A stretch of 64,000 bases of DNA from Magallana gigas (lineage: Eukaryota): NCBI RefSeq assembly GCF_963853765.1, contig NC_088858.1, positions 31,000,001 to 31,064,000 of the forward strand. The letters run 5' to 3'. The stretch's first letter is position 1. Each line of letters begins with the position of its first letter. A program made the translations under genes and the position numbers. Below the pieces are notes generated by a model. The model saw only the letters and a program-made list of their open reading frames with translations, was not told the DNA's origin and searched no databases. Of the stretch, positions 21,101-63,720 are shown piece after piece.

Positions 21101-24100
21101 TCACTTGCTTAGAATAAGTTTGACGAAATCTGAAAGAATCAAAATGGTTTTTATAATTAAAGAATAAGGAATCATTCCTTAAGTATTATGAGGTGATCCA
21201 AAACGGTAAGGAGTGATAAAATTTAATAAAACTATATGATAGATTTGACCGTATTTGATTACCTAAATAAGAATGCTTCCTTATTTCTTACATGTATATC
21301 TTTATAATTTTCAGCAATTGAACGATTAAATATTAAAAAAGTTATTGATGACCTGTATTGGACCATACATAACAAACTTGATTCGTAGTGTTACATTATA
21401 TCAAAGAAAAAGACACTGGATGATGTAAATATTAAAAAATACGATCAAGTAATAAAGATAAGGTTTATGAATGTATCGATTTAAGCAAATATAAACAAGT
21501 GGTTATGCAGAAAAATTTGTTTTGCTTTAACATTGATCCAACGAGATTAATGAAGTTGATTTTCTTCGCTATACATGCATATGATGGGGAATCTTACATA
21601 ACACGAATTTATTCAACAGAATGCAAGTGAAAGTACAGAGTCAAAATGACCATTGCAAATGTACAGTTATTTAAAATATATAGAAAGTACAAGACTAGTA
21701 TGAATCGGTTGTTGACTATTGATTGCCTACTCTGGACAAACCTTCTAATAAATAAAAAGGACTTTAGACTCTAGATCGTTAAATTTTGTAAAAACATCAA
21801 AAGTAATGAGGATGAAAAAAAATATATCGTATTGGGGAACGACCTTTTGATTGTGGTTAGACCAATAATCCATTGTGTACATATAAGATTTATTACCTTC
21901 ATAATGAACCTCCCCCTTCCCGTCGTCTGCTTCCTGTATCATTTCCGCTACTTCTTCATCTGAAAGTTTTTCTCCGTGGTTTGTCATTATTTGTCTTAGC
22001 TCGATTAAGGTGATATTCCCACTGCCATCTTTATCAAACGCCCGGAACGCCTCGCGCAAATATTCCTCTGTCTCTGGGGGTTCCTTTGTTTTAACGGCCA
22101 AAATTTTTATCACTTCCGTAAAGTCAAGTTTGCCATCTGCGTACACAAAAAAACATGCAATCTGCAAATTTGTTTTTCGAATTAATGGTCTTTTTTTAAA
22201 ACAACTACTAATTACCAAGAAATGATGATCCATAAGTTTTTAATATGATATGCTATGTATTTGATAAGTATTTTAACCTGAAATTCTTAATAAAAAGCAT
22301 TTTTTTTTTAATACAGTCCAAACAACAATATACCACAATTAAAAATGATTTTAAAGAAAATGTTTAACATTTGAATGATGTTATAATGTACACAAATGTT
22401 TCAAAACTAATGGTTGTATTTTCAGTTCCCATTACCAAACCAAAGCCAACAATAGATGTGCATGTGCTAAAACATGTAGTTGTTCAATAGTATTACCCCG
22501 AGTGTTTGCTGTAATTTGCTAGATAATGAACCAAAAGGAACTGTATATGATTATGTTTAGCAATTGTCGTTGGGATACTTGCATTTTTAGATAACCAATG
22601 GATGAGTCTAATTTTTTTCTTTTTACACATGCATGTACGTATGTGTAAAAGAGAATCAAATTAAACGAATCGTAAAGAAAAAAACTTCTCAGGTGTATAA
22701 TTTTGCAATAACATTAATGTATTTTAAAAAATTACTTCAGCAATTCGCAAGATTGCTGAAAAGAGATGATTATACATGTAAGTCGTTAGAGGCTATTGGG
22801 GTTTTTTTTAAATCCAGCGACACGTACGTACTGTCATGAACATACACATTAATATTATCATATTTCCCGTGGTTATAGTTAAAAAAACAAATTCGGATGA
22901 TAGTTTAAACTTCCCCTCGCACGAAATTCTTGTCAATTCACACCCGATACACGCAATTACGTAAAAAGCCATCTACATGTCCTTGCATGTAGTAAACCTA
23001 ATAGATCGTTATGATCTTCTTTGAGTAAAGTCGCTGTCAGAAACCCATTGTTAGGAGTAGACAATCTTAAAATCTGACAGTGGACAACAAAGGTCGAATA
23101 ACAGGTAAATCCGATTAACAAAAGTCGAATAACAGGTAAATCCGGTTAAAAAAATTGAATTAACAGTTAAATCCGGTTAAATGGGGAAAAAAATCGACCA
23201 TCCCTTATTTCTTTTAAGACTCGAATTGGAATTAACGTTCTGTATGATGAGAAAGAGTCGGTTAAGACATATTATATATTTATTACCTAATCAAAGAGAT
23301 TTTGTTGTTTTATAACAAATACAATATTTTGTATGTGTATTCAGGTTTGAAAGTGATCTATTGAACTGCCGGTCAATAGACTGCGATCTATTAGACCACC
23401 GGTCAATATACTGTGATCTATTGGACCGCCGGTGTAATGAAGAATAATGAACGGTAACCCCGTAGAATAATGACCGGGGGTCATTTTTTGACGTAGAATA
23501 ATGACCCCCCCCCCCCTTCCTGAAGATTGACTGGATTTTTCTGAAGAAAAAAGACACAGGGGTTATTTTTCTTCATGTTAAACATGAAGAAAAATGACCC
23601 CCGTAGAAAAATGACCCCCACTGTAAACAAGAATAGAAATTGGTTACCGCGTATCCAAGAATAGACTGTATTCTTTTAGAGCAAATGTGTGAAGAGTACC
23701 TGACTGTAGTAAATCTTAATAGATAATAAACACTGATCGATTATAATAAGAAGAAATTGTTTCTAAAAGCGTTGATAAGGGGTTTGGGCTCATATTAGGG
23801 GTTTATATCCTCTTTGATTTTGATCACACGATCTTTACTGCATCCAATGTTGTCAATGCTCATACAAACTATTGATGCTTTAATCATCTTGATATTCATA
23901 ATAGTATGTCGATGATAAAGTAAAATAAATTTTCTTTTCGAGTACTCTCAGTACTTTGATGATTTTTCTTATTACATTTTATGTTGAGTATATAATGATT
24001 AGGCATAGCTAGCACTGGTAAACATATATGTCACCTGTACACATTAAAATATTTATAAACATTCATAGTAATCGCGATAGCCTAGCGCATGCGTTCCAAT

Positions 24101-25887
24101 AATAGCATGGATTAATCGGAAAACCTTTGCGAGTACGGTGCCTGCATTAAATTCTATGTAATCGACCGAGACTTGCTGAATGCAATAAAAAAGGCGAAGG
24201 CGAAAGTGCGAAGATGCGAAGGCGAGAGTGCGAAGTTGCAAAGGCGAAGGAACGATTGTAGTATCGCTCCTTCGCCTTCGCACCTTCGCCATCACATCTT
24301 CGCGCTTCGCACACTCACATCTTCGCCCTAAAGGCGAAAGTGCGAAGGTCGTAGAGGCCCTTTCGGAACACCATAGATACATGTAAACGTAATCGTTAGA
24401 TGACAACCATACCCCGATGCATACGTCAGTATCTTGTTATAACGGAAGGATTTTTATTTTCTAAGATATACTCCTTCTTTCACTTTAACTTTATATTTGA
24501 ATATGAATTATAATTTCTGGTACTTTATGTAAACTGCAGTAAAAATTACAATATTGTAAAGACTATTACACAAATAATAAAAAAATATACTGAAACACTT
24601 TAATCTGTAAGGGGGTCATTATTCTACAGGGGTCACTTTTCGTCATGTAGAGTGTGCTCATTTTTATGAAAATGACACTTATTCTTCAGGCGAAAGAGTA
24701 ATTTTTCTACGTAGAATAATGACCGGGGAGTCATTTTTCAGCGTAGAATAATGACCGGGGGGTCATTATTCTACGTCGAAAAATGGCCCCCGGTCATTAT
24801 TTTACGGGGGTCATTATTCTACATTACACCGGCCAATAGACTGCGATCTATTGGACCGGCAACGTATTTCGGGAAAAGTTTAATTGCTATAAGATTAAAA
24901 GATAACTGTATAATGTTTTTTTTACTATTGTTCTTAAAAATCTTTTAGGTCATCTTGGTATTGATTAACCATGATCTGAATGCATAATGGTATAACCCTC
25001 TGTAATTTAGAATTGTGAATACAAAATACTAAAAACGGAATTAGGCAACAAAACAATTATTTAATGCCTGAACAGTCAATAAACCCGAACATTTTTCCCG
25101 AGGTGCTGGGAACTATTGCCCGAGGTCAACTACAATATACTCTTGGGTGTTATTTTTATTTTCTCTATAAAATTTCAATCATATATTCATCGTCATTTCT
25201 GCGTGTAGATTCTTTACTCACTAAAAGATAATCGCATGCCCAGAATAGAAAAATTGTATTTGATTCGTTCATCCACGGGAATCGTATATCTACAAATTAG
25301 GTTTAAAGTGCTATGAAAATACAATGTTGTACTTATACCAAATTAAAGAGGAGTATAACTCATATAAAGTGTCTTCAGAACTGAAGANNNNNNNNNNNNN
25401 NNNNNNNNNNNNNNNNNNNNNNNNNNNNNNNNNNNNNNNNNNNNNNNNNNNNNNNNNNNNNNNNNNNNNNNNNNNNNNNNNNNNNNNNNNNNNNNNNNNN
25501 NNNNNNNNNNNNNNNNNNNNNNNNNNNNNNTTGTGCAATGTCATTTACTACCCATCAACCTCCTAATTAATTTGTCTAGGAAAGCAAAATAAAAAACTTG
25601 GAACGAAATGATACCTTCCGATTCGTCTTCAATATCTAAGGACAAAGAGATAAAGTTGATATTTATGCTTGATTTCGTGTCTGCCAAAGGATCATGACGC
25701 GTTCTAAGACACCGGGGTTCACAAAGACTTACTTGAATATGTTTGTCCTTATTTAAATATCAATATCCATAATCGTGATCTAACCTAAAAACTCACCCAA
25801 ACACACATACACAAATTAAACGAGTTTATTCGTAGATCATACCTAAACAAAAAAACCTGGAAAACCTGGAAAAGTGAAATATTTATA

Positions 25888-25956
<69 letters not shown>

Positions 25957-28952
25957 AATTGGTTAAAACAAATTACGATTCTCTGCTACACACTACAGAC
26001 ACGTGGGGCTTGGACACTCCCTTCTCTTCAATATTTTTTTGAAAATATAAAAAAATTAAGCTGAAACACACCTTTATTATCCCAATCCCCAAATGCATAT
26101 CATTTCTCCGATAATGTACCCCGTCTCTACGATCTATTTCTAAATATCGCCCACAAAACACACACACACATCGCCCACAGTCGGAAAACGCGAGGGAGGG
26201 GGGGGGGGGGGGGGAGGGCGTTGTTCATGCCCTGGGTGCCTGCGTTATATACCGTTACAGCCATGAATATAAAATTTGAATTTACAATTCCGGATTATTC
26301 TTTACATCGAATGACCTTTAACCTTACCGTCCACGTCTCGGTACTGATTTATTAGGTCCTCTATTTCCACTTCCGTCGGATTCAGTCCCATTGATCTCAG
26401 TACCTTGCCCAGTTCCCGTACGTCTACAAACCCATCACAGTCCTTGTCAAAGAGACTGAAGATTTCTCGCATTTCTGACAATTATCAAAAAATTAGTTAA
26501 GAATAAAAATCAATTCAGTATGACCGTGCAAAGTAAAATTTGACCATTATCCTTCAAAATATATGATCTAATATGAAGAGGTTTTTTTACTATATTTTGA
26601 TCATCAAGAATTATTTAAAAAACATTATTCTAAACGTATGTTGTTTCCTTGTCCTTGTTCAAAATGACGTTATCATATCATAGGGCAAAATAGAACGCTT
26701 TTCTAACGTACATGTATGTCATAAACACTACTTAAACTCCATATTCCTTTCTGATTTTTTTAATTGATATGAAAGCTTAGATTTGCAATGCACTTAGATT
26801 CACAATTTTTAAGAACAAGAGGCCCACAGGCCTTGACGGTCACCTGAGTACCATAGCTCTAAGAATGACTGTCAGAGTGTCCCATATTTGCATTTTAAGC
26901 TTCACTTTGAAGTCTAAACCGTAATCTGAGACACCAGCTACCCTGATTTTATTCATTGATATTTGACAATAATCATTCATGAAAAGGGGAAAGGGTTTGT
27001 GCAAGAGTCAGAGGAATCTCAGATTATCTCAGATTATCTATATCTTAGCCCGGGGCCAATAATTGTAAATTTTGGTAATAAGAGACCTACATTTTATTTC
27101 TACTAGCATACAATACACAGGATATTAAAGTAGATTTCCTAAAAAGAACATATTTAAGTCTATATTGCCAAGTGACAATTTACCATTTAGTTTTCCAGAT
27201 GAAGTTAAATTTGTTAATGTATGACATACAGCCATTACCCTTATTGAAAATTCATATTCAATATACGGTCATATTTATACCCCACCCCATTAAAAGCATC
27301 AACTTTAACATTAGGATATTATGAACAATTTATAATGCATTACTATCTCCCACGACTTAAATAGTACATATTCTGAAAAAATATCATTAAATCAAAACAT
27401 TTTCACTATGTTGCCATATTGGCCCAGCCCAAGGGCCTGAATCCCTGTCTCAGAGACACTATATGTCTCAATTTTACAATTCTGGTAGAGGACTTCATGG
27501 ACATGATAACAATGCATTTAGTTGTTCTCAAATTATTGAGAAAACGGTTTTCTATGATTTAATAGTTTTACACCGTGAATGGCCATATTGTTCCTACCCT
27601 ATAGTCTGATGAACTCCTGCCTCAGGGGCCCTGAATTTCATAATTCAGGTAGAGGACTTCGTGGACATCATAACCATACATTCAGTTTTTCACAATTATT
27701 CATGGGAGTAGAGAAGATTTTCTAAGATTTTATACATTTACATTTACACCATATGGCTGCATTGGTCCTGCCCTAGTTCTGAACCCCTGACCAAGGGCCA
27801 TGAATTTCACAATATTAGTAGAGAGCTTTATGGACATTATAACTATGCATATAGTTTTTCCCCAAAATTTGTGGGAGGTAAGTAGAGAAGAATTTTATTT
27901 TTAAAATGTGGCCTTTTTCAGCATATTTGGTCCCGCCTATGAGGTCCTGAGGTAGTTAAGCCATGAATTTCACAATTTAGATATAAGCTGAAAATGTAAA
28001 ATGGTTAAGGTATGGCGGACGACGGATGACGCACGACGACGGACGAAGACTGAGTGCAATAGATCACGCGAGTGATTCAGGTGACCTAAAAGTAAGTACA
28101 TGCCCAATGCTTGCATCGCTTTTATTCCAGTTTAGTGTAACTGTTACGTAACTAATTAACTAAATCATTTCCTGGCCCGTTAATTTGATCCTTATATTAA
28201 TGCTTTAACTAATAAAACGGGAACACGTGCACTTCACATGGTTGTCTGTATTTATAGGGATTTGACTGTCGCTACATGCTTTTTTAACTATTTTTGTAGT
28301 TGTGATAAATGAATCATTTTCCTTATTCCTGATAAGAAACGTCTTGTCCCCCCCCCCCCCCCCTTTTACCATGTAATCGTTATCAAATTGAACGGGAAAA
28401 CAGACCATATTTGATTGGAGAAGCAAAAAAAACCCCATAAATATCTAACTTGTAATAATTTGATGAGTTCAGAGCAAATGAGTCAAAGATGAAAAAATAA
28501 ATCATGTTATCATTAAAATATATAAAAATTTGAAGTTTGAATTCCCCCTGCAAGACTGTCGTCTATAGAAAACTATCATGACTGTTGAATTAATACACAT
28601 TTGGGCGATCATTAGTACATTTATGAAATTTTAAATATTGGAATCCAATAACTTAGCTCAGTTCAAATTGAACACATTTGTTTACACTGATTGCGCAATA
28701 ACACATATTTATACAATGCTTATAAACCGTGTGGCTTTTTGCTAATAAACTATCCTACTATACACCACCCAAATTCACATCCTATTTACTCATTATCGAA
28801 AAGCTTGCCATGTCTTTTACACATACTGTTAAAGTTTTTACTTACATTTTTTTGTAAACCGTACATTTAAAAAGAAAAATATGTTTAAAACAATTTGAAA
28901 AGAAACAGGTTTAAAACTTACCTGCGATCTGCTCTTCTGATAAATTCTCCAT
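21101..28952 (-). CDS. Calmodulin-like / myosin-light-chain-like EF-hand protein, locus A (~148 aa)
   Basis: Coding exons 28952-28922, 26474-26328, 22136-21897, 21129-21101, all with AG/GT boundaries and continuous frame. Protein: [45 protein letters not shown]...[21 protein letters not shown]. Probable non-coding exon with a GTAAGT donor ends at 29325. Intron 3 spans an N-gap. Confidence 0.85.
23089..23180. repeat. ~31-bp tandem repeat x3 (aaaggtcgaataacaggtaaatccggttaa-like)
   Basis: Direct reading of the sequence. Confidence 0.75.
23353..23432. repeat. 30-bp quasi-palindromic tandem repeat (gatctattggaccgccggtcaatagactgc), resuming at 24833-24860
   Basis: Three units on the left, and the same phase continues to the right of the inserted element. 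Confidence 0.8.
23433..24828. mobile_element. Non-autonomous DNA transposon with TGTAA...TTACA ends and CCGG target-site duplication (Ginger-like)
   Basis: CCGG at 23429-23432 and 24829-24832. Imperfect TIRs of ~80 bp are built from GTAGAATAATGACC motifs. A CGAAG/CTTCG repeat patch lies at ~24190-24350. No transposase ORF. The superfamily call rests on termini and TSD only. Confidence 0.7.
25894..25953. repeat. (CT)n microsatellite
   Basis: Direct reading of the sequence. Confidence 0.95.
26814..28091 (-). mobile_element. Helentron/HINE element carrying ~165-170-bp satellite-like core repeats (intron 2 of locus A)
   Basis: AACAAGAGGCCCACAGGCC..GGTCACCTGAG at the left end. (GACG)n-like stretch and CAGGTGACCTAAAA at the right end. 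Tandem cores recur at ~27486, ~27649, ~27819 (gtagaggacttc). Confidence 0.75.
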
Positions 28953-31900: not shown

Positions 31901-32061
31901 ATTCAAGACAAACTTGACTCTTTGTGTGCTTAGATCTTGAGGTTCCCTTAACTTTGCCATCCGAACTCTTCAAGGAACCGATGCGTCTTACAAGTACAAT
32001 ATAGTCCTTCCACGGCTCGAGTCATGTTGATTTTGTTGGAGAAAAAAAAAGAAAGATACCA

Positions 32062-33151
32062 TCACGTATTATTCGACGTAGTGGAAGGTTTTTCCATCAT
32101 GCTTACGAATTCTGAAAAAGATATTAACCATTTGTATAAATAAATGTACTAGGCGACCCTTTTTGGAGACATTTTTTCTTTGGTTTTATGGCCAAAAACT
32201 CTAAGCTGCTTTTGTCTCGGTGTGAATGAAATGTTTTCTAACTCAATTTTGTTGATCTATCAATAATTCATATATATCAAACAATCACATTTTAAGCATT
32301 GATAAGTCTAACGACCGAGAAGAAAAAAGATAATTGCAATCATAGGTTCATATTATGTTCAGAATTTACAAAAGATCTGTGTTAACCCTACTATTTTATA
32401 GATTTAATTTCTGAATTGTTTAGTATAATGTGAACCATAAAAGAAGTAGATAAAGGTCGTTATTCGACGTTCCTTTACACGATTTTTCGGTATATGTTAT
32501 GTAAGTGTGTTTAAATTGCTGAATCTTTCCTGGAGGGCATTCACACAGGAAATTTCTTGCNNNNNNNNNNNNNNNNNNNNNNNNNNNNNNNNNNNNNNNN
32601 NNNNNNNNNNNNNNNNNNNNNNNNNNNNNNNNNNNNNNNNNNNNNNNNNNNNNNNNNNNNNNNNNNNNNNNNNNNNNNNNNNNNNNNNNNNNTGTAATAC
32701 ATGTATCACAGAAAGCGCCAGTTGTTCGAACAGAGCTACATGTAGGTGTTACTCTTTGCATCTGACACTTTCATATATACGTGTGACCGATTTGTTACAC
32801 AAACAGATTTTATCACTTTTCTGAGACGCTTGCAATGAATATGCTTAGATTTAGAAATCAATGCCAGTACACGGCATCATTATAAATTATTTTGATTTTG
32901 TGATATTTCATGTACTACCGATAAACAGATATTAGTTACTAAATCATTATTCTATACAGAAACAACAATGCAATTAGTAGAAATATTCAATAATAGTGAT
33001 GGAAAATGTCTTAGTTTGAAAAAAGCAATACATTTTTACGATTATTTGAACATAGTATTGACGTCACACATACGTCAATTTTATATAATGTTTAATGTAT
33101 TCGTATGAACGACACGACAAAGGCTCACTCACCCAATAATTTTACTGCGCA

Positions 33152-33204
<53 letters not shown>

Positions 33205-36200
33205 TACCCCGGTAGTTGACCTGCCCGTCTCCGTCGGCGTCCGCCTCCTTTATCATCTCGGCGATTTCGTCGTCCGTCAGTTTCTCCCCCAGGTTGTTCA
33301 TCACCAGGTGGAGCTCCTCCTTGCTGATGTAACCGTTCCCGTCCTTGTCGAACACCTGGAACGCCTCCCTGAGTTCCTCCTCGGGATCCGCGCACTCGGC
33401 ATGTTTCTTGGCCATCATGTGTAAAAACTCGTCAAAATCTATAGCACCATTTCCTAAAAAAAAAAAAAGGAAATGAAACACGTGCTAAACATTGTAGATT
33501 CATAATTTAACACGATGCCGAATGCAAAGGGCGACATAACAGGGATTTCTCTCGTCTGGCATTGTTGCCAGGCTTAGCAATTATTATCTGCCGCATGTTC
33601 ACTAACAATTTTGCATCATCAATAATAAAATAGCCAAACAATAAACCTATCAAATATGAAAACCAACAGTTGCCATGTTGGGAGTTTTTATATCGTAAGA
33701 AATAAAACCATTTTAACAAGACCCTGGACTTCCGATAGGGCGTAACTATCTACATGTATTTTTACATCAAAACAAGTTAAAAATGACGCTGGTTTTTTAG
33801 TGAAATATGAATAAATCGCGTAGTTTTAGCTAAAAAGCCAGACAAATCTTTTTGATTTCAAAGAACTATAAATGATTTGCCAGCAATGAAATAGACAGGC
33901 CTACGTCACATTGCTGTTTATGCTATTTATACAACTACCTTAAGTCCAAGCTCTTGTTATAATGGTTCTACTCAATGGTGAAGAATATATAACATGGAAA
34001 ACGCTGGGTTCTTGAATTATTTGCTATCATTCTACTAAGAACACAAAGACAAATGATTCGGTTTTAAACATGCATCGCAATCGATATTAGTTTTGTGAAA
34101 CATGAATATCTTGTACTGAATCCGTTGCTATAGTAACGACATTATAAAATAAGAAACATTATATATTTAATATTAATATGTTTTAAAAGTTATTTTTGAA
34201 AAGGGGTAATGTTAATATTATAATCTACTCACACAAGCATTTTTATGCAACACGAAAGTGCTGTTGCTATAGCAATTTATGTGTTGAAGAAATATACGCA
34301 TTTTTTTTCGCGAAAACTCCATGGCAAAATGCATTTTTATTCAGTATGTGTGAAAGTTAAGAGCATACTTGATCTTTCTCAACATTTAATATCACCGGAT
34401 TTTATTGTTCAAGGCGCAACTCCATTATTATTCAATCTTATATATGTAAATATATGTAAGAAATATGTCTGCTGTGAGAAAAAGAGGAGGGGCAGGATCT
34501 TGCAAGATCAGATTCAATATTGTTTCATAATAGAATGGTGTTTCATTAAGAAGGTGCTATTTGATTTACAGAAACTACACCGATTTTCCAAATATGCATG
34601 TATCAATTCCATGCATATACATGTACGCTCTATTGCATTTTTCTCATTTCTTGCTAGTAAATAATAAGGTATCAAACATGTGAAAAAGATAATAATTTTC
34701 TTATCTAAAGTACTTTTTTTTTTTCCAGAGCTGTTTAAGTGGCGTAAATTTTTCAAAAGTATGAGTATGACCAAAGTAAATATTTATTTCTTTTAGATTT
34801 TTCACGTCTTTTGATACAATATACTAGTATACAATGTCAATAGAAATCTTAAGAAATGTTTGAAGACCAATGACTTCTTAATAATCGCCATCGATATATT
34901 CTTGATTACTTTCTTCATGGGGTGGGGTCGGTAAAGCAACCTTCATGGAATGAAAATCCTGATGGCGTCGCACACCCGCAACAGGTGAAGCAAGGAGACT
35001 GCAATGTGCACCTGCTTTCAAAGTAAAGTCGGGGTGTTCTGCATGTGTGTGAGTGTGTGCGAGATGCATTGTGCGTTAGGGGGAGAGAGGGTACGGCGGA
35101 GAGAGGTTCCCCGCGTCTTTCTGGGTACAAATTATATATCTGTTTCTGATGTACATTGTAACTTTTATTTCTTTTATACTATTCAAATAAGGAACAATAA
35201 CCTAATATTCGAAACTTTACATACATGTATTTTGACAAAATTATTCTCATTTAAAGGACATAATTTCGAATTCTTTATTTAAAGGTTATCTTTTTCTCTA
35301 ATACATGTGCTGTGCATGCACCTGTTTTGCTTTGGGGGGGTTTTGTGGGGGGGGGGGGGGTTGGGGGGGGGGGGGGTTTAGGGGGGGGGGGGGGGTAGAT
35401 AATAAACTGGCTTACATAATAAAGAAACATTTCATCTATAAAAGGTAAAAATGCATGATTTTAATTAACTTTTACAAATTGAAAAACTTCAAGAAATTTG
35501 GAGGAAAAAGTATTTCTTTTAATCTTTGAATGTAAGTGTGTGTTTGCTTCTATTTTATTTCAGTAACACTTATTATTTAAAAATTAAGTGTAAAATCTGT
35601 ATATATCATTGTTACATAATAAAATAAATTAAGTCTTCCAAACTTCTCACTAATTTCTGTGGGGAAGAAGTAATAAAGTATGAATTGTCTGCCATTGGTT
35701 GGTCCTCAAATAAAACTAGTAATTTTTGTAATTTTCCCAATTTGAACAGTTTACGCGTCAATTTTCCCAATTCAACGGACCCTGGACCCAGTTTAAAAAC
35801 AGTAAGAAAACCCCTGTATGGGGGTTCTAAGACTTGCCTATAGTTTTCTTTTCAAAAACCAGAACACAGTTTAAGTGTTTATGTGATAAAAATCGTCAAG
35901 ACTAGTAAATATGGAAAGGAATTCCACATATCTCCTGATCGTGATAAGACATTTCCGTGTGTATCATGTAGTTAATAATACATTTAACTAGATACTGGTT
36001 TTAAATTGGAAACCGGGCCGACGTTAATATTATAACATCTATCGTAACTTACTCTCATGTGCGTCAATATTTCATTATTTATGAAACAGTACACTACTTT
36101 CATACAGATAATACTAGACACCCCGAGTAGTCGACCGTGCAAGTGTCATATCAATTACTAGTATTATCGAATCTCTTCTTTTTCCAGTAACAGTTAGAAC

Positions 36201-40252: not shown

Positions 40253-40298
40253 AACACAATATGGTGTCGTAAAAATTGCGTACAACATATGGTTGAAA

Positions 40299-40385: not shown

Positions 40386-40464
40386 GTTGAAATGTAAACT
40401 TAAAATTCCCATTAACATGAATGACAAATAAACGTTATAAAATTGTAGAAGAAGTCTAAATTCG

Positions 40465-47587: not shown

Positions 47588-49042
47588 AATGGTTTAATCC
47601 AAATCAGTAAAGAAATCTCATGTGCAGATCTTGAGACGAAACCTATTGTTCAAATCCTCTAGCGACACTTAATCTAATTCTTGACTTATCATTAGCTATA
47701 GACGCCTGATCCGATCATCCGTTTAAAATACAACTATTAGTTGGTGGCTCAATTACTTCGGCCATGCATTTAAATCAAAAACCATCAGCCCCCATGGATC
47801 ATCCAAGACTTTAGTAAATCGTTCACTTCAGAGATTAAAAAAAAATTATAACAGATCGATACCCAGAAATCGAAAAAGTTTTGGCGACCAGGGCCGGGAG
47901 CGTTGGGGTAGTTTAGTTTTGCTGTTTACTGGGTATAATGATTTTTTTAGTTCGTGGGTAAAACCATTTAAGAATCATAATTGTCCATTTTATCGGCAAT
48001 ATTTTACTAGGGCTGAGGTTTCCGATCTCCTACTGGCTGAGTAAACAAGGACTCAGGTTAATACGACAGATTTGTCAATCAAGGACCAAAAGGGGCTACC
48101 ATACGTCTTTTTTATGTGAGAAAAGAGGGTATATTAATGGTTATATGATACGGCCTTCATTCCCGGGATTAGGGGACAGTTACTAGTAGTAAGAAATGTG
48201 GGTTATCTGTACGAATATAGAATTTGGTTCTCCTGGCTCTACCCTGTCTTTGTTTGACATGATAGTGGTCGATGTTTGATAAAGAATGGTGTAAAGTGGG
48301 GTCTACATGATGCGTGCGTTCTTTGGCACTTCTCAATTTTTGAATTTATTTTCTCGAAACTTGTGTGAAGGTTTTACTTTCAAGGCCAGTAGGCTATCAG
48401 AACATTGCCCTTTTTTAACAGATATTGCACGTCTTGATAATTTTCATATCCATCTAACATTTCTCGAGTGCGGATAAAGAGAATATTTTCCTTTAGTATC
48501 ATAGGAAACAATATTAAATTACGACCTTTCTATAGAGTTGATTACATTTTGTCCATTGGTAAGTTACTTAGCTGGTGACCAAAAATATTCTTCTTTTACC
48601 AGGAAAAAGAGAAGTAGGAAAACTCCCCGTAATTATGTATTTCATCATTCTCCTCTTTTACCCTTATTTTTTGGCTATTTTGATGATTAATGTAAGATTC
48701 TGTTATCAATTTTTTTTTTTAAATAGGGTGTCTATAATGTACAGAAAACGTGACGTATTTCCGCTTGAAAACCGACATTGTCGCAAGCTTTTCAATAAAG
48801 TAATTTCGTCCGAAGCTATCTAAATGTAAATATTAGATTGATGCGCTGTCTGCATCTTCTTTTAAGAACAAAGTAAGACATCAGAGATGAATTATACACA
48901 GAATGGACGGAATCATTTATTCACATACAAGTTTCATTCACATAACAATAATAACTCTCATTTTCACAAGTTCTCGTTCGAATTCATACAAAAAGGATTC
49001 TCTATTGCAATGTTTTGCTACAAGCGCATCGATGATCCAGAT

Positions 49043-51533: not shown

Positions 51534-51593
<60 letters not shown>

Positions 51594-54062
51594 CATCCTA
51601 AAAATTCACACAATGATTTATATTCTTTCAGAAAATATTTTGTTGCATTGTTTGTTATGTTTGATAATGTAAAAAATCGTATATATATGAACATGTTCAA
51701 TGACATGTAACTACAATAGTTACAATATAGCCTTGCTACCTTTGCACATCGTCTCAATGATATCTTTAATCTCGTCCTCTGGCATGGGCTGCTCCACTAG
51801 TTCTAATAATTCTTTCAGAATATCTTGATGAATAAAGCCCCGCCCCTTTGCGTACATTTCAAAGGCCTCGGAGAAATCTAAAACATGCAATGCATTAAGT
51901 ATAATTTGATAAAATTCAATTACGCAGAATCCGAAAACAGCATGGCCATTTTTTAATATTTATTTGCCCGTGATAACACTACGTATCGATTTTGTACTAT
52001 ATAACCCATAATACGAATGACGCCAAATTGAGGCGCCAGCGGGGTTTTCTTATTTAAATATTTAGTCGTACGATCATGGCTTAAAATTATATAAATATAA
52101 GTAATAAGGAATCATTCTTTGAATATTATGAGGTGATAATTTCGGTCGGGGCGTGATCCAATCTATCATAAAGCCCTTCGGGCTTTATTGGATTTGATCA
52201 CGCCCTGACCAAAATTATTTTTTATTTATTTATTTCAACTTTGAGCAATAAGCTCATCAGCATTAAACATAATTACATTTATAAACATATGCGTGGCACG
52301 CAAAATGCGAAGCCAGTAGGCTTCAGAGTCTCTAGTCTCATAATACTCAAAGAACGATTCCTTTATTCCTTTTTTACATACCTGCAGCCATATCATCTTT
52401 TAACTGGTACGTCTGCAAAGGAAATTGTAAATGATGAAGGAAAAAACACAGAAGACAGATATTATCGAACAACCAAAACAGGGGTTTAATTTACATGGTT
52501 ACAAACACAATTACATATTTTTTTTAATTCAGACAGACATTTGGAATTAATAGATTTTTTTTAATGTATGTTTTAACGGTGAATGTTACAACAGATTTAC
52601 ATTTAACAATGGGACAACTTGTCACAACCAAAACAACCATGATGTAATATGATGCTGGTATTATATACTATTGCTTGCATGGTGAATCTTGGTAGTTCAA
52701 ACAGTTTGAGGGTGGTTACAAAACAAGCAATAATGATAGTTTTTTATGTGGCATTAGGCTCAGGTTATGTGTTAAAAGCCGAATATGTCAATAAAAAACG
52801 GTATTTTTGAATTAAATTTTTATGGTTAAAAAAGAAAATTGAAAGAAATTCTGCCTATTATTTCTTTTTATTGCCATCTAACAATTAAATATCTTCAAAC
52901 CAAATATTTTATGCGGTAAAGAAAAATACCATCATGCAATAAAAGTTGTCTCCCGGTAATGATATAGGATAGATCTTTGATAAAGTGAACACATTATTTT
53001 GGGTTGCCATTAACTAAAAAAATAAAATAATGCATCACGAAGCACCATGCTCTGTTGAGATTGCCTTTAATGATGATGACATTTTTTTTTTTAAACTTAA
53101 TATTATGTACAATTAGCGGTTTGACAATTTCAAGTCAGAAATGTTGAGTACATGTATGTGGACAATTGATTAATTGTTACGTGTAAATATCTATATATAA
53201 CAAAAATAAACATCGACATAAAAAAGGATAACAAACAAATTGTTAGTAGTGCAAAGTTAACAAAAACATAAACAATCGTGCTCAAAATGTTTCGGCTTTA
53301 AATGTGGAAAAAAAATTAAATGACGGTGGCTATTAAAAAACACAACAATAAAAAAACAAGGGAAATAGGTTCAACAGATCAATTTGTTCTCATGTTGCAC
53401 AGTGAATATGAAGCAAAAGTTCATATCATTCTAATGGCGATATATATTATTCATTTTTATATCGACCAAAAACGGCTTTTACATATGAATGCAGTAACAC
53501 TGAAGAGCAGACGATTCAAATACAGCCGATGGTTCCAATAATGTATCGTTTTTAATACTTTCAATTTGCCTACGTCCAATATTTGCTTAAAGTATAAACC
53601 CGTCATACAATGTCGTGCATACTGCCAAACCAATTTGCATGGCAGACTTTGCCGGGAAAACACATTGTTGAATTTTATTTATTAATATTGATTTAACTCA
53701 AGATATATATTTTTTATAAACACAAGATTTTGAATACTGAATACACATACGGTTCCCTGAAAAGAAAGAAACTATGTAGTGTAAAAGGGGAAGAGACAAA
53801 GGATACAAAAAAAATTCATGTATATTTATAAGGAAAGCTACAAAATAAAAAGAATTCAAAAAATATAAAATTGGTGCTTTGAAATTCTTGTACCTGTTCC
53901 CCAAATGGATTCGTATTCTAGAGTAAAAACACAATATTTGGTTAAATGAACATTGATTTTTTTCTTTACAAGACAACATTGTAGCAATGTTTCGATGTTT
54001 GTGAATCGGATTTAAACACACTGAGAAAATAAACATTGATCTATACTTACCGAAGAGGACAT
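49043..54062 (-). CDS. Divergent calmodulin-like protein, locus E (~153 aa; N-lobe EF loops degenerate)
   Basis: Exons 54062-54051, 52412-52382, 51877-51740, 51404-51159 (GC donor AG|GCAAGT), 49077-49043. Protein: MSSSTYQLKDDMAADFSEAFEMYAKGRGFIHQDILKEL...DADGSGSIDRSEL...DLDGDGEIDFEEFVAMMNDANP*. Confidence 0.85.
51539..51590. repeat. (CT)n microsatellite in intron 3 of locus E
   Basis: Direct reading of the sequence. Confidence 0.95.
52000..52218 (+). mobile_element. Interspersed repeat ending in a long hairpin (52136-52218); partial sister copy at ~21160-21205
   Basis: ataatttcggtcggggcgtgatcc..ataaagccc-ttcg-ggctttattggatttgatcacgccctgaccaaaattat. aataaggaatcatt..tattatgaggtgat is shared with ~21165. 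Confidence 0.6.
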
Positions 54063-55873
54063 GATTTCGTCAAACAAAAAGATTGTTGTCTAGTATATTT
54101 CTACCATCTATAACCAGTCACTGTCAAAAGAATGTTGAGTAACTATGAAATAAAATGGAAATGTAGAAAAAAAATGGAAGATGAATCCACCTTTGAAAGA
54201 ATCAAAACAGATCGATGCCTCGGTTGAATGACTTCGGTTCAAGCTTATACGCGATCGGTGGATTATTGGGTATTTTTATCTTTACCAATCGAGTAAAGGG
54301 CTTACAATGCTCTCGATACGAGTCGTTGGTAGTTATCGATATTAGCTTATTAAAATGCCTTTTAAGATGACAGATATAATTCCATTCAACGGGTGTGTAG
54401 TGTGGAATGGATTTAGTAAGTAAAACAAAATCTGACTTACGTATATGAATATGTCCTATTTTCCTACATCCAACATGGTAGGGAAGTCGCGAATATCAAC
54501 ATAGATTTCCGTTTCTATGTATGTTTCCAAACAAAACCCAAATCATTTGTCAGGTATATACAGAGCGAAGGGGATCCGAAATCACTGGACTTTAAATTTT
54601 ATTCGGCCATTCACAGACAGTATTTATAGCGTGGACGACTTTTAAATTTATTATTGTTAAAAATAAAAATTGGACGTAATTTCTTTTATAAGGAGATGGA
54701 ATAACAGAATAGAAAACCCTCCGTTGGTATAGCAAGTTAATATACGCTTTATACACGCATAGTTTCACCTGAAGAATCATTCTCTCTCTTTTTTTTAATT
54801 GATTTGTTGGGCATGCAGAGCTACGGAAGAAAATCAATCTATAGTGAAGTCAATATTTTTTCAGTCTAGCTATGAGTGAAAAAAGGTGAACGGTTCTAGA
54901 TTTTTTTCAGTGGACATGGTAGTAAAAAATTAACTAAAGGTGAACTCATTTTAAAACAAAGTTATTATTGCTTCTATCATGACCATAAGTTTTCCTTTTC
55001 AAATTCATCTGCCAAAATTGAATTCGAAGTAAAATGAGACAAGTGTTTTAAAACACTGATGGCTCCTACTGCTACTTTCAAAACTTGACCGCAAAAAAAG
55101 ATCCGATAATAACTAATTCGAACACATGAGTATCGGGTTACACAACATATTTAGAATACTTTGACCTAAAATCTCCGCTATAGAAATACACAGTAGAACA
55201 TTTAACTATGTTAAACTTCGATTTTATACTTGTAATTAAGCTGACCCTTTTTCAATTTTTATTTTTTCAGATTTATAATTTACCTTAATGACAAAAGTAT
55301 TTCAAAGTTTGTAGGTGACACGATGAACGTTCTGCATATATACACAAAAATATTCAAAAAAGAGTTTTCATTATTGGTCCTTTCTTAAACGACCTTTTTG
55401 CACTTGAATTCATTTCATTTAGGTTTAAGTCATATATATAGACTCTCTTCTTTTTTAGTGTGTACATGTGTATTATGGATAGATTAAGTACATGTCTACG
55501 TTAACAACATTGTATACATGTACACGTGCATCATATATAAGTTTTTTTATGCTGTAAAATGAAAAGAATATATTCAAGAGATTTGCAGTCAACATTTTAT
55601 TTCAAATAATAACAAAAATATTGAATCAAGATTTAACAACGCAAATTACATTGCAAAAATATTATTATATCTTAATTTCAAACATTAATTTATAATTTCC
55701 ACAACACAAGTACAATACTAGGCCTATATACAATTGTTAAATCATTCCTACACAACTCACTCAATTCAATTAGCAGCTGGTTTGGCAAATCGTCATTTAG
55801 TCCATGAATTGTTTGAATCCGTAACACATATTTACAGAATTGTGCTTGTTTCCCGTTATGTTGTGATATCAAA

Positions 55874-58657
55874 TTATTCCGTCATTACTTTTATAAATTC
55901 TGGAAAAAAAATGATATAAAATAACTATTTTGATAACATTTAACTTGGGCTGCTCTATGATTTAATATGATACAAGTTACTGTTATATCATGCTCGTATT
56001 TTAGCCCTGTAAGAAATTTTCCAAACTGCAAAAGGATATAACATTGACCAAATTAAATCATATGCATTTTAGACGCCAGTTTTCGAATGTACCTATACAT
56101 TATACATATTTTCGAATGATACATAATACATAAGGACTTCTGATTGTAACGCCAACATGCTAATGTTATCAAATAAATATCGAGTTGAAACAGGCTTCTT
56201 TACACTGGAAAAAATCATCACAAATCAAGATAAATGTATATTGTTATAGTAAGCATTTCATCCAGGGGAAATTTTAATTTTAAAAAAAACCAGAACTGGC
56301 GTGGAGCGAAATAATCCCATTTCTACCATGGCAGATGTCTCGGTACTTTGGTATACTCACTGAAATCGACAACTTACCAATGTAATTGATATCACCGTCT
56401 CTTTACTTACTGGGATATACAACTTACCAATGTAATTGATACCGCCATCTCCTTCCTTACTGGGATATACAACTTACCAATGTAATTGATACCGCCGTCT
56501 CCTTACTTACTAGGATAGACAACTTACCAATGTAATTGATACCGCCGTCTCCTTACTTACTGGGATAGGCAACTTACCAATGTAATTGATACCGCCGTCT
56601 CATTACTTACTAGGATAGACAACTTACCAATGTAATTGATATCACCGTCTCCTTACTTACTGGGATAGACAACTTACCAATGTAATTGATATCGCCGTCT
56701 CCTTACTTACTAGGATATACAACTTACCAATGTAATTGATACCGCCGTGTACTTACTTACTAGGATATACAACTTACCAATGTAATTGATACCGCCGTCT
56801 CCTTACTTACTGGGATATACAATTTACCAATGTTATTGATATCGCCGTCTCCTTACTTACTGGAATAGACGACTTACCAATGAAACTGATACCGCCGTCT
56901 CCTTACTTACTGGAATAGACGACTTACCAATGTAATTGATACCGCCGTCTCCTCACTTACTGGGAAAGACAACTTACCAATGTAATTGATACCGCCGTCT
57001 CCTTACTTACTGGGAAAGACAACTTACCAATGTAATTGATACCGCCGTCTCCTTACTGGGATAACCAACTTACCAATGTAAATGATACAGCCGTCTCCTT
57101 ACTTACTAGGATAATAAACTTACCAATGTAATTGATACCGCCGTCTCCTTACTTACTGGGATATACAACTTACCAATGTAATTGATATCGCCGTCTCCTT
57201 ACTTACTAGGATATACAACTTACCAATGTAATTGATACCGCCGTGTACTTACTTACTAGGATATACAACTTACCAATGTAATTGATACCGCCGTCTCCTT
57301 ACTTACTGGGATATACAATTTACCAATGTTATTGATATCGCCGTCTCCTTACTTACTGGAATAGACGACTTACCAATGTAACTGATACCGCCGTCTCCTT
57401 ACTTACTGGGATAGACAACTTACCAATGTAATTGATATCACCGTCTCCGTCTATATCTGCCGTTTTCACTGCCTCTTTCGCTTCCTCGTCCGTCAGTCGC
57501 GGCTTGTCCCCCATAGTGGTCAGGATTAGGAACAGCTGATTGGAGCTAATGGACCCGGTTCCGCTGTCATCGAACACTCGGAACGCCTCGCGTATTTCAT
57601 CCTCGGTATCCGTTTCCTTCATCTTCTTTGACATCATTTGAAGGAACTCGTTGAAGTCTATTTCCCCATTACCTGGAGTAAATCAATGGAGAAAGTCTCT
57701 CGTTAAAAGCGTACGTTTGATAGAAACATCTCCGGCACACATACTTCTTAAACACTCCAAAATAATGTACAGCTACAAGTATAATTGACACAAATATATC
57801 TTCAAAGATACATTGAACACGATGCTTTCCAGTTTTGCATTTATGATATTGGAGTATCTGCTCTCTTGCNNNNNNNNNNNNNNNNNNNNNNNNNNNNNNN
57901 NNNNNNNNNNNNNNNNNNNNNNNNNNNNNNNNNNNNNNNNNNNNNNNNNNNNNNNNNNNNNNNNNNNNNNNNNNNNNNNNNNNNNNNNNNNNNNNNNNNN
58001 NNNNNNNNNNNNNNNNNNNNNNNNNNNNNNNNNNNNNNNNNNGAAGTGTCTTACCATCTTGATCCACTTCGTTGATGAGTTCCTCTAGCTCCGCCATTGT
58101 GGGATTCTGACCCAGGGACCTCATCACTGACGCCAACTCACCGCCGGAAATGTTCCCGGAGCCATCTTTGTCGAACAGGCTGAACGCCTCCCGAAACTCT
58201 GAGAGAGCAAAAAGAAATGAAATCTTTTGTTACGTATTTGAAAATATTCTTCAAACTTTTCAGATAAATCAATCAATAGAGTTTTTAAAGACGAAACAAA
58301 AGAACCACAGAGCATATGTACAATGCACGTGAAATTAAAAAAAATAAAGTAAATATCAATATGCTCTGCATGTAACGACATTCCAAATTTAACATAGTTT
58401 TGACGTTACTTGACTTAATAGTCAGATAAAATACATTTGGTAATTTAATTTATGAAAGTTACATGTCCTAGTTCATATTTACCCTCGACTTGATCCTCTG
58501 TCAACGCATCCTGAAATATTATCAAAATTATCATAAAAACATGTTTTAAAAAAAACCGTGAAATATAGCCATTTTAAGTAATAATATCTTAAGAAAAGGG
58601 GGGGGTTCCTAAGGATAAGGAATTAAGGAAATCACAACATAAACAAAAACTTACCAT
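55874..58657 (-). CDS. Calmodulin-like protein, locus F (~149 aa)
   Basis: Exons 58657-58655 (ATG|GTAAGT), 58510-58483, 58198-58055, 57672-57424, 55899-55874. Protein: [44 protein letters not shown]...[38 protein letters not shown]. Intron 3 spans an N-gap. Confidence 0.9.
56369..57448 (-). repeat. 50-bp minisatellite (~21.5 units) made of the last 24 nt of locus F exon 4, its donor and 26 nt of intron
   Basis: Minus-strand unit: GGAGACGGCGGTATCAATTACATTG|GTAAGTTGTATATCCCAGTAAGTAA. The donor motif recurs every 50 bp from 56371 to 57021, then after one 46-bp unit from 57067 to 57417 (22 copies, two with a point variant). Confidence 0.95.
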
Positions 58658-62115: not shown

Positions 62116-62121
62116 TTTATT
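62116..62121 (-). terminator. Candidate polyadenylation signal (AATAAA) of locus G
   Basis: AATAAA about 105 nt downstream of the TAG stop. Such hexamers are common in AT-rich DNA. Confidence 0.4.
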
Positions 62122-62226
62122 TGCACTTTTCACAGAAAAAGTCAACACAAAATATATAAACGAAGTCAACAATCAATATTTACAATATGTACAGTATGTC
62201 AATGTATATGTTTTAGTCCGAGTTTC

Positions 62227-63720
62227 CTATTTTTTCCTGGTCGGTGTTCCGTGCTTTGGATCGTGCTTCGTATCCGTTTTTGTGTCTGATTTAGTCGCCG
62301 CTGGTGTGCTTCCGGTGGCGCCACCCTTCTGCGCATTCTGGGCGGCGGCTTTTTGCTCTTTTTCTTCTTGTCCAGCACCAGCCAACATTTTTACAAATTC
62401 TACGGAAAAAAAACTAAGTTTCTTATCGATAGAAAACTAAGAAAGGGTTCAGTAGATCTTTTTTTTTTGTTGAAGTAAAAATTGATTGTTTCAAATATCG
62501 GTGAAAATGAACATTCCTAAAGAAGTACAGGCTGTGTTATTACGTAAATAGGAAGGAATTCGAAATACGTGTTCTTAACTGTTCAATACCACTTGTTGAA
62601 AGATAGCATTAAGTCAATTTCCTCATATTGACATGTGTACTATATGTTGCAAAATTTGAATTTACTGACACTTGACACTTACATGACACTTTTTCGTGTT
62701 GTAAATTGTATTTCCTGTCACCTAATGAATTAACCATTTACATGTAAAACATGCGACACGTGTCACACTCATACCGTCATAATCTATATCTCCGTCGCCA
62801 TCCATATCCGCTTCCTGTATCATCTCGTCCACCTCATCATCTGACAGTCTGTCCCCCATTGTGGTCATGATGTGACGTAGGTACGCGGAACTAATTGACC
62901 CTGACCCCTCTTTGTCGAACACTTTGAAAGCTTCTCGAATTTCTTGCTCAGAGTCTACGGCATTCATCTTTTTTGCCATCATCAGGAGAAACTCTTGAAA
63001 GTCAATTTCTCCATTTCCTGAATATTTTAGAGGGAAGAAAAATCGTTAAAAGTATTTTGAACGAGTTCTACAAAAATTTGATGTCAAAAGTTTTTCTCTA
63101 CTATTCTTTCTTTCAAAAGATATTATTGTGATCATGATCGAATTTTCTACATGTCCGAATGTAATTTATGCAACAGTATGTTTCATTTTGTGCAGTGTCG
63201 ATTTTGAATTGTACATTTATATGATATAAAATACACGGTAAATAAAACATGAAGCTATATAAATATTCTTCATTATGGCCTTGTTTATATACATAATGAT
63301 ATACAGCACTGCTCGGTGGGTTTTGCCAAATACCTGTAGATTTTATCGGAATATTCGATCAAAAGCGCTCGAGAACCCAAGAAAAAAAAAAAAAGATTTT
63401 TTGTGTGACAGTAACATACCTAATCATCAAAGAGCTTACATTCGGATAAAAGGTAATGAGGTAATTTAGTACGTAACGTTAGAAGAGAACTGATATAGCA
63501 CTAGTGTAGCTCTAACAAGTTACAATATATTGGTACTACATGTATCTTATGGTTGGATTCAATCCTCTGTCCCTACCGTCTATGTCGACCTCCTCCACTA
63601 GGTCCGTCAGTTCCTGGTCCGAGGGGTTCTGTCCCAGGGACCTCATGACTGTCCCTAATTCATCGTTGGATATCGTGCCAGATCCGTCTTTGTCAAACAA
63701 TCGAAACGCCTCCTTAAATT
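62227..63720 (-). CDS. Calmodulin-like protein with long C-terminal extension, locus G (5'-partial)
   Basis: Exons 63720-63577, 63017-62775, 62399-62227. Protein: [34 protein letters not shown]...[68 protein letters not shown]. First exons are not found in the window. Confidence 0.9.

What the first reader, a model, noticed from the sequence alone, without database searches (positions are those of the whole stretch)
21101..63720. Tandem array of seven calmodulin-like loci with a different pattern of working EF hands in each
Seen: seven same-strand loci share the CaM exon plan but differ in predicted Ca2+ loops (EF1-4). A is + - + -, B is + + + +, C is a pseudogene, D is (+) + - +, E is - - + +, F is + + - +, and G is + + - + with a tail. 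Established: loop positions 1, 3, 5 and 12 supply Ca2+ ligands, metazoan CaM itself is nearly invariant, and CaM-like proteins are implicated in bivalve shell formation. Inference: a birth-and-death cluster producing Ca2+ sensors with different stoichiometry and targets, possibly for calcification or muscle. The array may continue beyond the right edge. I cannot tell whether it has been described.
Basis: partly seen in the sequence, partly recalled or inferred. Interest (0 to 1): 0.8.

Follow-up and report, generated by a model that had tools for sequence, protein, structure and literature searches.

The report
Old oyster calmodulin-like gene array
This stretch of Pacific oyster DNA holds six working calmodulin-like calcium-sensor genes and one broken copy in a row; each has kept its own set of switched-off calcium sites since before oyster lineages split, which makes it a real but fairly ordinary and already annotated gene cluster.

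Summary
Seven calmodulin (CaM)-like loci lie on the minus strand between 21101 and 63720. They share one exon plan, with coding exons of about 31, 144, 243 and 29 or more nt and phase-1 introns.

All three assembly gaps lie in introns, and no exon is missing.

The genome is Magallana (Crassostrea) gigas. E and F match RefSeq or UniProt proteins exactly, and D matches the front of a fused UniProt model. RNA reads or cDNA contigs confirm the D and E junctions.

"Birth-and-death" fits only C, a young unexpressed copy of D with a frameshift. The other six are old:
- G-F-E-D lie in the same order and strand in Saccostrea cucullata, at 91-100% amino-acid identity, with the same dead loops and the same G tail. 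dN is 0.02-0.045 while synonymous sites are saturated.
- B-A adjacency and A's shortened loops are kept in Pinctada imbricata.

A role in shell or muscle was not tested.

The scan has already noted this kind of array on neighbouring and distant DNA of this genome. It is a known kind and already annotated, but no paper describing it turned up.

The parts
21101..28952 (-). Locus A, CaM-like gene, pattern + - + -. Coding exons 28952-28922 ([10 protein letters not shown], own ATG), 26474-26328, 22136-21897, 21129-21101 (DFVKLILSK*). The assembly gap 25388-25530 lies in the e2-e3 intron.
   Evidence: Model and splice sites. Loops. EF2 and EF4 are each one residue short, and EF4 position 12 is Asp. 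Pfam EF-hand matches. Identity to CaM is 56%. The Pinctada imbricata orthologue (KAK3092309.1, L007) keeps the ATG in e1, Cys at EF1 position 4, and both shortened loops; its last exon reads DFIKLILGKV*. No RNA evidence was obtained for A.
32060..38081 (-). Locus B, CaM-like gene, all four EF loops canonical. Exons 38081-38051 ([10 protein letters not shown], no ATG), 37438-37295, 33453-33208, 32111-32060 ([16 protein letters not shown]). The assembly gap 32561-32692 lies in the last intron. The ATG exon upstream was not located.
   Evidence: Identity to CaM is 67%. A Pinctada B-type gene lies just upstream of the A-type gene on the same strand, is 77% identical in amino acids, and also has a Ser/Thr-rich C-terminal extension. 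No RNA evidence was obtained.
40470..42034 (-). Locus C, a young dead duplicate of D. Exons 42034-41998, 41905-41762, 41446-41203, with a +1 frameshift after LTDEK. The remnant of the last exon near 40485 reads EFEKK*.
   Evidence: Frameshift and degraded loops. Similarity to D covers exons, introns and flanks. dS is 0.33 and omega 0.35. C's branch is 0.30 against D's 0.034. Two polyA RNA runs give zero depth, and one unspliced 126-nt contig has depth 4. No C copy lies within 7 kb downstream of D in Saccostrea.
45028..46488 (-). Locus D, pattern (+) + - +. Exons 46488-46452 ([12 protein letters not shown], no ATG), 46359-46216, 45637-45395, 45060-45028 ([10 protein letters not shown]). A small ATG exon lies further upstream and was not located.
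   Evidence: RNA junctions 46359|46452 and 45636|46215 appear in two raw polyA runs and one RNA contig. First mates lie on the + strand only. UniProt A0A8W8HYV3 begins MA+[12 protein letters not shown] and includes the NYQ|EFVAMMTG junction. Identity to CaM is 76%. The Saccostrea orthologue is 94-98% identical and has the same E at EF1 position 6 and N at EF3 position 12.
48892..52736 (-). Locus E, pattern - - + + (dead N-lobe). Exons 52736-52382 (5'UTR plus start), 51877-51740, 51404-51159 (GC donor), 49077-48892 (EFVAMMNDANP* plus 3'UTR).
   Evidence: cDNA contig L006 maps as four blocks with exactly these junctions. The model equals RefSeq XP_011427022.1 and Logan protein P0398. Identity to CaM is 39%. 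The best solved relatives are all calmodulin. The Saccostrea orthologue is 91-93% identical with the same dead EF1 and EF2.
55873..58510 (-). Locus F, pattern + + - +. Exons 58510-58483 (DALTEDQVE, no ATG), 58198-58055, 57672-57424, 55899-55873 (EFIKVMTE*). The assembly gap 57870-58042 lies in the e2-e3 intron. The minisatellite 56354-57448 lies in the last intron.
   Evidence: The model matches UniProt A0A8W8HYU8 from M+DALTEDQVE through NYIEFIK. The Saccostrea orthologue is 96% identical, has the same [12 protein letters not shown] loop and the PR insertion, and its last exon reads EFIKVMTG*. Identity to CaM is 64%.
62225..63720 (-). Locus G, pattern + + - +, with a 48-residue basic, hydrophilic C-terminal extension. 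Exons 63720-63577, 63017-62775, 62399-62225. The first coding exon(s) lie beyond 64000.
   Evidence: The tail's reading frame and length are kept in two Logan oyster contigs (L001, L002) and in Saccostrea, where 43 of 57 residues are identical. The 56-residue last-exon peptide that includes the tail has no Pfam family. Within the extension there are no hydrophobic residues and pI is 9.7. The e3-e4 junction is inferred from conservation, not from reads.
56354..57448 (.). 50-bp minisatellite, 22 copies, which repeats the 3' end of F exon 3 together with its splice donor.
   Evidence: TRF. Translated copies. It is absent from the Saccostrea orthologue, whose last intron is about 240 nt. It is the subject of a separate scan note (s1-399333).

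Best explanation
This is a segment of a large, old tandem array of calmodulin-derived (CaM-like) genes in the Pacific oyster. Six members (A, B, D, E, F, G) are intact genes that arose by duplication of a CaM-type gene. They keep CaM's intron positions and were already separate, in this order, before Magallana and Saccostrea split. A and B were already separate and adjacent before Ostreidae and Pteriidae split.

Each gene has since been held under strong purifying selection with a fixed subset of working Ca2+ loops:
- B keeps four.
- D, F and G have lost EF3.
- A has lost EF2 and EF4.
- E has lost the whole N-lobe.

The likely mechanism is inferred, not shown. Each protein would be a small two-lobe Ca2+ sensor or light-chain-like subunit. 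A dead lobe or site would no longer respond to Ca2+ and could serve as a permanent, apo-type anchor on a partner. The live sites would set stoichiometry (2-4 Ca2+) and sensitivity. G adds a disordered basic tail that could change partner choice or location.

C is a recent extra copy of D that is decaying and silent.
For: Shown:
- Seven loci, one strand and one exon plan.
- Loop states.
- Pfam EF-hand matches.
- D junctions in RNA reads.
- All E junctions in a cDNA contig.
- E and F match RefSeq or UniProt proteins of M. gigas over the stretches stated in the parts, and D matches the front of the fused UniProt model A0A8W8HYV3.
- Saccostrea cucullata has G-F-E-D in the same order and strand, at 91-100% amino-acid identity, with the same dead loops, last exons and G tail.
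- dN is 0.02-0.045 with synonymous sites saturated.
- Pinctada imbricata has B-type then A-type on the same strand with A's shortened loops.
- Each window gene pairs with its Saccostrea orthologue at 100/100 support, while deeper nodes are unresolved.
- C is young, frameshifted, fast-evolving and unexpressed.
- E's closest solved structures are all calmodulin.
Against: No Ca2+ binding, partner or tissue data were obtained, so the sensor-or-anchor mechanism is inference from loop chemistry and conservation. A, B and G have no direct RNA support here. A's EF4 has Asp at position 12 and D's EF1 lacks Gly6, so 'dead' and 'weak' are predictions. The tree does not show that the seven form one clade apart from canonical CaM, so a single local origin is not demonstrated. 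Only 7 kb downstream of D was seen in Saccostrea, and only 10.7 kb in Pinctada.
Confidence: 0.8

Rival explanations
1. A fast birth-and-death cluster: copies arise and die quickly, and the different EF-hand patterns are recent, lineage-specific experiments or decay.
For: C is just such a case: a recent duplicate of D with a frameshift and no reads. C also differs between assemblies of the same species. In the version behind RefSeq XP_034323712.1 its 3' half is intact.
Against: The other six genes have 1:1 orthologues with the same patterns in Saccostrea or Pinctada, with very low dN and saturated dS. Paralogues are only 48-72% identical in nucleotides and share no intron similarity.
Confidence: 0.1
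2. Some members are not Ca2+ sensors derived from calmodulin. Instead they would be myosin light chains or troponin-C-type muscle proteins that happen to lie together. E carries the UniProt name 'Sulfhydryl light chain'.
For: UniProt gives E that automatic name. E has a Ca2+-dead N-lobe, as many myosin light chains do.
Against: The 60 best solved matches to E are all calmodulin (E about 1e-28), and no myosin light chain appears among them. E shares the CaM exon plan and phases with its neighbours. Its C-lobe has two canonical loops.
Confidence: 0.1
3. The array is an assembly artefact: haplotigs or collapsed and expanded repeats around the three gaps inflate the copy number.
For: Three N gaps lie inside the region. 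Oyster genomes are highly heterozygous. C differs from the C of another assembly.
Against: Copies differ by 28-52% in exon nucleotides, far beyond allelic variation. Order and number are reproduced in an independent Saccostrea chromosome assembly and partly in Pinctada. Six likely-DNA runs (kind not on record) hold 76-86% of the words of the D-C stretch.
Confidence: 0.02

Closest known systems
Canonical metazoan calmodulin (CALM genes)
   Same: Two-lobe protein with four EF-hand motifs. The closest solved relatives are calmodulin. The introns fall at the same places: after the ATG, after about 31 nt, inside the EF2 loop after 144 nt, and inside the EF4 position-12 codon. My memory of human CALM exon sizes 31/144/107+136/29 is a lead, not a test.
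   Different: Identity to CaM is only 39-76%. One to two loops are dead in five of the six intact genes. One CALM intron is absent (e3 = 243 nt). G has a 48-residue tail and B a 7-residue extension. None of the seven is the oyster's canonical CaM.
Calmodulin-like proteins in multigene families (plant CMLs; vertebrate CALML3/4/5/6)
   Same: These are small EF-hand-only proteins derived from CaM. They often arise by tandem duplication, have variable numbers of working loops, and are thought to widen the range of Ca2+ decoding. CALML3 sequences were among the hits.
   Different: This is a lophotrochozoan array whose gene order and loop states are conserved between oyster families. Functions are unknown.
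Pinctada fucata CaLP (calmodulin-like protein with an extra hydrophilic C-terminal tail, implicated in shell formation)
   Same: G is a CaM-like protein with an extra hydrophilic C-terminal tail. The CaLP tail is described in papers cited by PMC5040781 and PMC5379566.
   Different: Orthology was not shown. No Pinctada protein was among the 120 best hits to G's main exon.
Other CaM and CaM-like arrays of the same genome noted by this scan (s1-381008, s1-375705, s1-388610, s1-375844)
   Same: Same genome, same gene type, same theme of conserved dead loops. s1-381008 ends 3.6 kb left of this window, and s1-375844 starts at G.
   Different: Those notes concern other loci. An exon-limited gene conversion was reported for one of them (s1-375754), and it is not seen among these seven.

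Membership tests
Canonical calmodulin | About 149 residues and near-invariant sequence (over 90% identical to metazoan CaM) | tested here: not met
   Identity to a near-canonical CaM (P0078) is A 56%, B 67%, D 76%, E 39%, F 64%, G 67%.
Canonical calmodulin | Four canonical 12-residue Ca2+ loops (D1, D/N/S3, D/N/S5, G6, E12) | tested here: not met
   Only B has four. The others lack one or two, through substitutions at position 12 or position 1, or through one-residue deletions.
Calmodulin-like (CML/CALML-type) proteins | Made only of EF-hand pairs in two lobes, with no other domain | tested here: met
   Pfam finds only EF-hand families in the exon pieces, and nothing in G's tail.
Calmodulin-like (CML/CALML-type) proteins | Calmodulin is the closest characterised relative | tested here: met
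   The best named hits are calmodulin or 'neo-calmodulin-like' proteins. The 60 best PDB matches to E are all calmodulin. PDB was tested for E only.
Calmodulin-like (CML/CALML-type) proteins | Descent from a CaM gene, shown by shared intron positions and phases | tested here: inconclusive
   All seven loci share phase-1 introns at the same codons. The match to vertebrate CALM exon sizes rests on memory, not on a sequence compared here.
Myosin essential ('sulfhydryl') light chain (name attached to E in UniProt) | Closest solved relatives are myosin light chains | tested here: not met
   No myosin light chain is among the 60 best PDB matches to E.
Pinctada-type CaLP | CaM-like core plus an extra hydrophilic C-terminal tail | tested here: met
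   G has a 48-residue extension with GRAVY -1.8, pI 9.7 and no hydrophobic residue, conserved in three other oyster sequences.
Pinctada-type CaLP | Orthology to P. fucata CaLP and mantle or shell-layer expression | not testable with these tools
   The CaLP sequence is not held. Both read tools were already used on D and C. No Pinctada hit appeared.
Processed or unprocessed pseudogene (locus C) | Disrupted frame, relaxed constraint and no expression | tested here: met
   C has a +1 frameshift, omega 0.35 and a long branch, and zero depth in two polyA runs. It keeps its introns, so it is an unprocessed duplicate.

The most novel reading that the evidence does not exclude
Together with the ten paralogues noted just to the left and about three to the right, this window may be part of a roughly 140-kb array of about twenty CaM-like genes. 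In that reading, gene order and a per-gene 'which lobe still senses Ca2+' state have been frozen since pteriomorph bivalve families diverged. The array would be a conserved toolkit of lobe-specific Ca2+ decoders, with the tailed member G as the ostreid counterpart of the shell-associated Pinctada CaLP.
Probability: 0.2. Interest if true: 0.5.

Novelty: new member of a known kind. Interest (0 to 1): 0.3.

Why it matters
Oysters carry more EF-hand motifs than other sequenced molluscs (PMC5040781), and single 'CaLP' genes have been tied to shell formation and to responses to acidified seawater. This array shows that much of that excess is not recent noise. It is a set of old paralogues kept separate, each with a fixed pattern of live and dead Ca2+ sites. 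That gives a defined list of natural 'site-knockout' calmodulins (4, 3 and 2 sites, or C-lobe only) for testing how lobe-specific Ca2+ binding maps to targets in a calcifying animal. The report also corrects some database names and models. It is useful groundwork, not a new principle.

Tried and rejected
- ATG-containing first exons: regex searches for B, D, F and G found none. The exons encoding ..EEQI.. lack an ATG, so a tiny upstream ATG exon is needed. This is supported by UniProt models that begin M+DALTEDQVE and MA+[12 protein letters not shown]. Its position in the window was not found.
- The look-up of encoding contigs on P0002 and P0236 found nothing on record.
- Monophyly of the array: the tree is a star, and no deep node is supported.
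- Gene conversion between paralogues: exon identities are 48-72% except for C/D, so there is none.
- Literature: six searches found no description of this array or of 'CgCaLP' in the held library.
- G as the orthologue of Pinctada CaLP could not be tested.
- Assembly artefact was rejected.
- Joined spliced models were never sent to a search tool. Searches used single exons by reference or database proteins. Joined translations were made only inside scripts, for the loop table, identities, dN/dS and the tree.
- Short tail peptides printed by earlier calls were retyped.


Full report
**What is there**

A strict EF-hand loop pattern hits seven times on the minus strand between 21 and 64 kb and never on the plus strand. 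tblastn with the window's own exons finds exactly seven calmodulin (CaM)-like loci and none in 1-21000. Pfam EF-hand families match the exon pieces at E 1e-7 to 1e-22.

All loci share one plan:
- A short exon encoding ..L(T/S)EEQ(I/V).. ends in phase 1.
- A 138-147-nt exon carries EF1 and the first four residues of the EF2 loop.
- A 240-249-nt exon carries the rest of EF2, EF3, and EF4 up to loop position 11.
- A last exon supplies two bases of the EF4 position-12 codon plus the C-terminus.

In B, C, D and F the short exon has no ATG, so a tiny ATG exon must lie upstream. UniProt models that begin M+DALTEDQVE (F) and MA+[12 protein letters not shown] (D) agree. A and E carry their own ATG. G's 5' exon is off the right edge. 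From memory, the sizes 31/144/243/29 equal vertebrate CALM exons 2, 3, 4+5 and 6. This is a lead, not a test.

**Gaps, tested first**

The three N runs lie in introns: A e2-e3, B e3-e4, and F e2-e3 (the last begins 12 nt after the donor). The exons on each side are phase-compatible. They join exactly as in UniProt A0A8W8HYU8 for F and as in the Saccostrea and Pinctada orthologues, whose corresponding introns are short and hold no extra exon. Intron lengths in the window remain unknown. Nothing was filled in.

**EF-hand states**

The locally joined translations were aligned to a near-canonical CaM (P0078). The results are:

| Locus | EF1 | EF2 | EF3 | EF4 |
|---|---|---|---|---|
| A | [12 protein letters not shown] + | one residue short - | [12 protein letters not shown] + | [11 protein letters not shown], one residue short, D12 - |
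| B | + | + | + | + |
| D | [12 protein letters not shown] (+), no Gly6 | + | [12 protein letters not shown] - | + |
| E | deletion - | MCKGSSRLDLEA - | + | + |
| F | + | + | [12 protein letters not shown] - | + |
| G | + | + | [12 protein letters not shown] - | + |

C is frameshifted. Identity to CaM runs from 39% (E) to 76% (D). None of the seven is the canonical CaM.

**Species and existing annotation**

F equals UniProt A0A8W8HYU8_MAGGI over 145 residues. E equals RefSeq XP_011427022.1/XP_034323698.1. D equals the first 150 residues of A0A8W8HYV3. C corresponds to XP_034323712.1 'neo-calmodulin-like'. The window is therefore Magallana (Crassostrea) gigas, and the genes are already in public annotation under generic or misleading names.

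**Transcript evidence**

Junctions 46359|46452 and 45636|46215 are seen in two raw polyA RNA-seq runs and one RNA contig. First mates lie only on the + strand, as expected for a minus-strand RNA. C has zero depth in both raw runs.

For E, a 925-nt Logan cDNA contig (L006) maps as four blocks, 52736-52382, 51877-51740, 51404-51159 and 49077-48892. This confirms all three junctions, including a GC-AG intron. Protein P0398, seen on 13 contigs, is my E model exactly.

A, B and G have no direct RNA support here.

**Age of the genes**

A 28.6-kb stretch of Saccostrea cucullata (GCA_033153115.1, L005) carries G, F, E and D in the same order on one strand. Exon identities are 91-100% in amino acids, with the same dead loops, the same short first exons and last exons, and G's tail. 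Between the two genera dN is 0.02-0.045, while 73-98% of synonymous sites differ, which is saturation.

A 10.7-kb stretch of Pinctada imbricata (GCA_033119305.1, L007; protein KAK3092309.1) carries a B-type gene, 77% identical and again with four good loops and a Ser/Thr-rich C-terminal extension. About 3.3 kb downstream on the same strand lies an A-type gene, 65-77% identical. It has the ATG in the short exon, Cys at EF1 position 4, and the same one-residue-short EF2 and EF4. Its last exon reads DFIKLILGKV*.

In a tree each window gene pairs with its Saccostrea orthologue at 100/100 support. All deeper nodes collapse onto CaM. F and G share GSISS and TTMGD motifs and may be sisters; this was seen by eye and not tested.

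**The one young copy**

C matches D through exons, introns and flanks. Between C and D, dS is 0.33, dN 0.115 and omega 0.35. C's branch is about nine times longer than D's. It has a +1 frameshift, a truncated last exon and no reads. No C copy lies within 7 kb downstream of D in Saccostrea.

In the assembly behind RefSeq and Ensembl, C's 3' half is intact and D-like. C may therefore be polymorphic, or it may have been overwritten by D in one haplotype.

**G's tail**

The last exon encodes EFVKMLAGA followed by 48 residues with no hydrophobic side chain, pI 9.7 and GRAVY -1.8. The last-exon peptide has no Pfam family. The frame and length of the tail are kept in two other oyster contigs and in Saccostrea, where 43 of 57 residues are identical. 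This recalls the 'extra hydrophilic C-terminal tail' of Pinctada CaLP cited in PMC5040781 and PMC5379566. Orthology could not be tested.

**Interpretation**

What is shown is an old, stable, co-oriented array of CaM-derived genes under strong constraint, plus one recent dead duplicate.

What is inferred is how they work. Each paralogue would be a Ca2+ sensor or light-chain-like subunit whose dead sites make one site or lobe Ca2+-independent, so that it could serve as a permanent anchor. The live sites would then set stoichiometry and sensitivity.

The UniProt name 'Sulfhydryl light chain' for E is not supported, because its 60 best solved relatives are all calmodulin.

**Context in this scan and the literature**

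Earlier notes of this scan report ten more co-oriented paralogues ending 3.6 kb left of the window, about three more to the right, and several other CaM arrays in the same genome. Their follow-ups reached the same 'old cluster, known kind' verdict on other DNA. I did not see that DNA, and I use these notes only as leads.

Six literature searches found no paper describing this array. Li et al. 2016 (PMC5040781) noted that the oyster has the most EF-hand motifs among sequenced molluscs.

**Method note**

Joined spliced models were not sent to any search tool. Searches used exons by reference or database proteins. Joining was done only in local scripts.

**Verdict**

This is a new, well-documented member of a known kind, already annotated. 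Interest is 0.3.

Noticed in passing
window 56354-57448: A 50-bp minisatellite with 22 copies repeats the end of F exon 3 together with its GT donor inside F's last intron. The Saccostrea orthologue has a plain intron of about 240 nt, so the expansion is lineage-specific.
   Followed up: partly
window 7643-9190 (-): A single-exon 515-aa ORF matches the rhodopsin-family GPCR model PF00001 (E 3e-20). It sits between this array and the CaM-like array reported to the left of the window.
   Followed up: partly
window 42507-44114: A dispersed repeat lies between D and C. RNA reads are very deep on both strands, mostly 90-99% alike, and many have loose ends. Related copies lie at 15478-15739 and 33703-33970.
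   Followed up: no
window 41203-41446 versus P0002 / P0409: Locus C is frameshifted and diverged at its 3' end in this assembly. RefSeq XP_034323712.1 and UniProt A0A8W8HYV3 show an intact, D-like 3' half. This could be a polymorphic pseudogene, D-to-C conversion in one haplotype, or an assembly difference.
   Followed up: partly
window 45028-45060 and 41998-42034; protein P0409: UniProt A0A8W8HYV3 (307 aa) fuses D to C through a GT inside D's last exon and reads C's first exon out of frame. It is probably a read-through or chimeric gene model.
   Followed up: no
window 51157-51158: E's last intron uses a GC donor (AAG|GCAAGT). The junction is confirmed by cDNA contig L006 and by RefSeq.
   Followed up: yes
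window 55873-55899; protein P0193: UniProt A0A8W8HYU8 ends ..EFIKKNRTYSYTDWL by splicing at a GT inside F's last exon. The unspliced ending EFIKVMTE* is the one conserved in Saccostrea (EFIKVMTG*).
   Followed up: partly
L007 5120-5420 (Pinctada imbricata): The deposited model KAK3092309.1 uses a downstream donor (..EEDGKNYGKMDF..). The conserved donor GAT G|GTAAGA gives the same short EF2 loop as oyster A.
   Followed up: partly
window 33140-33205, 25894-25954, 51539-51590: Long (GA)n/(CT)n microsatellites lie in introns. One starts directly after the donor of B exon 3.
   Followed up: no
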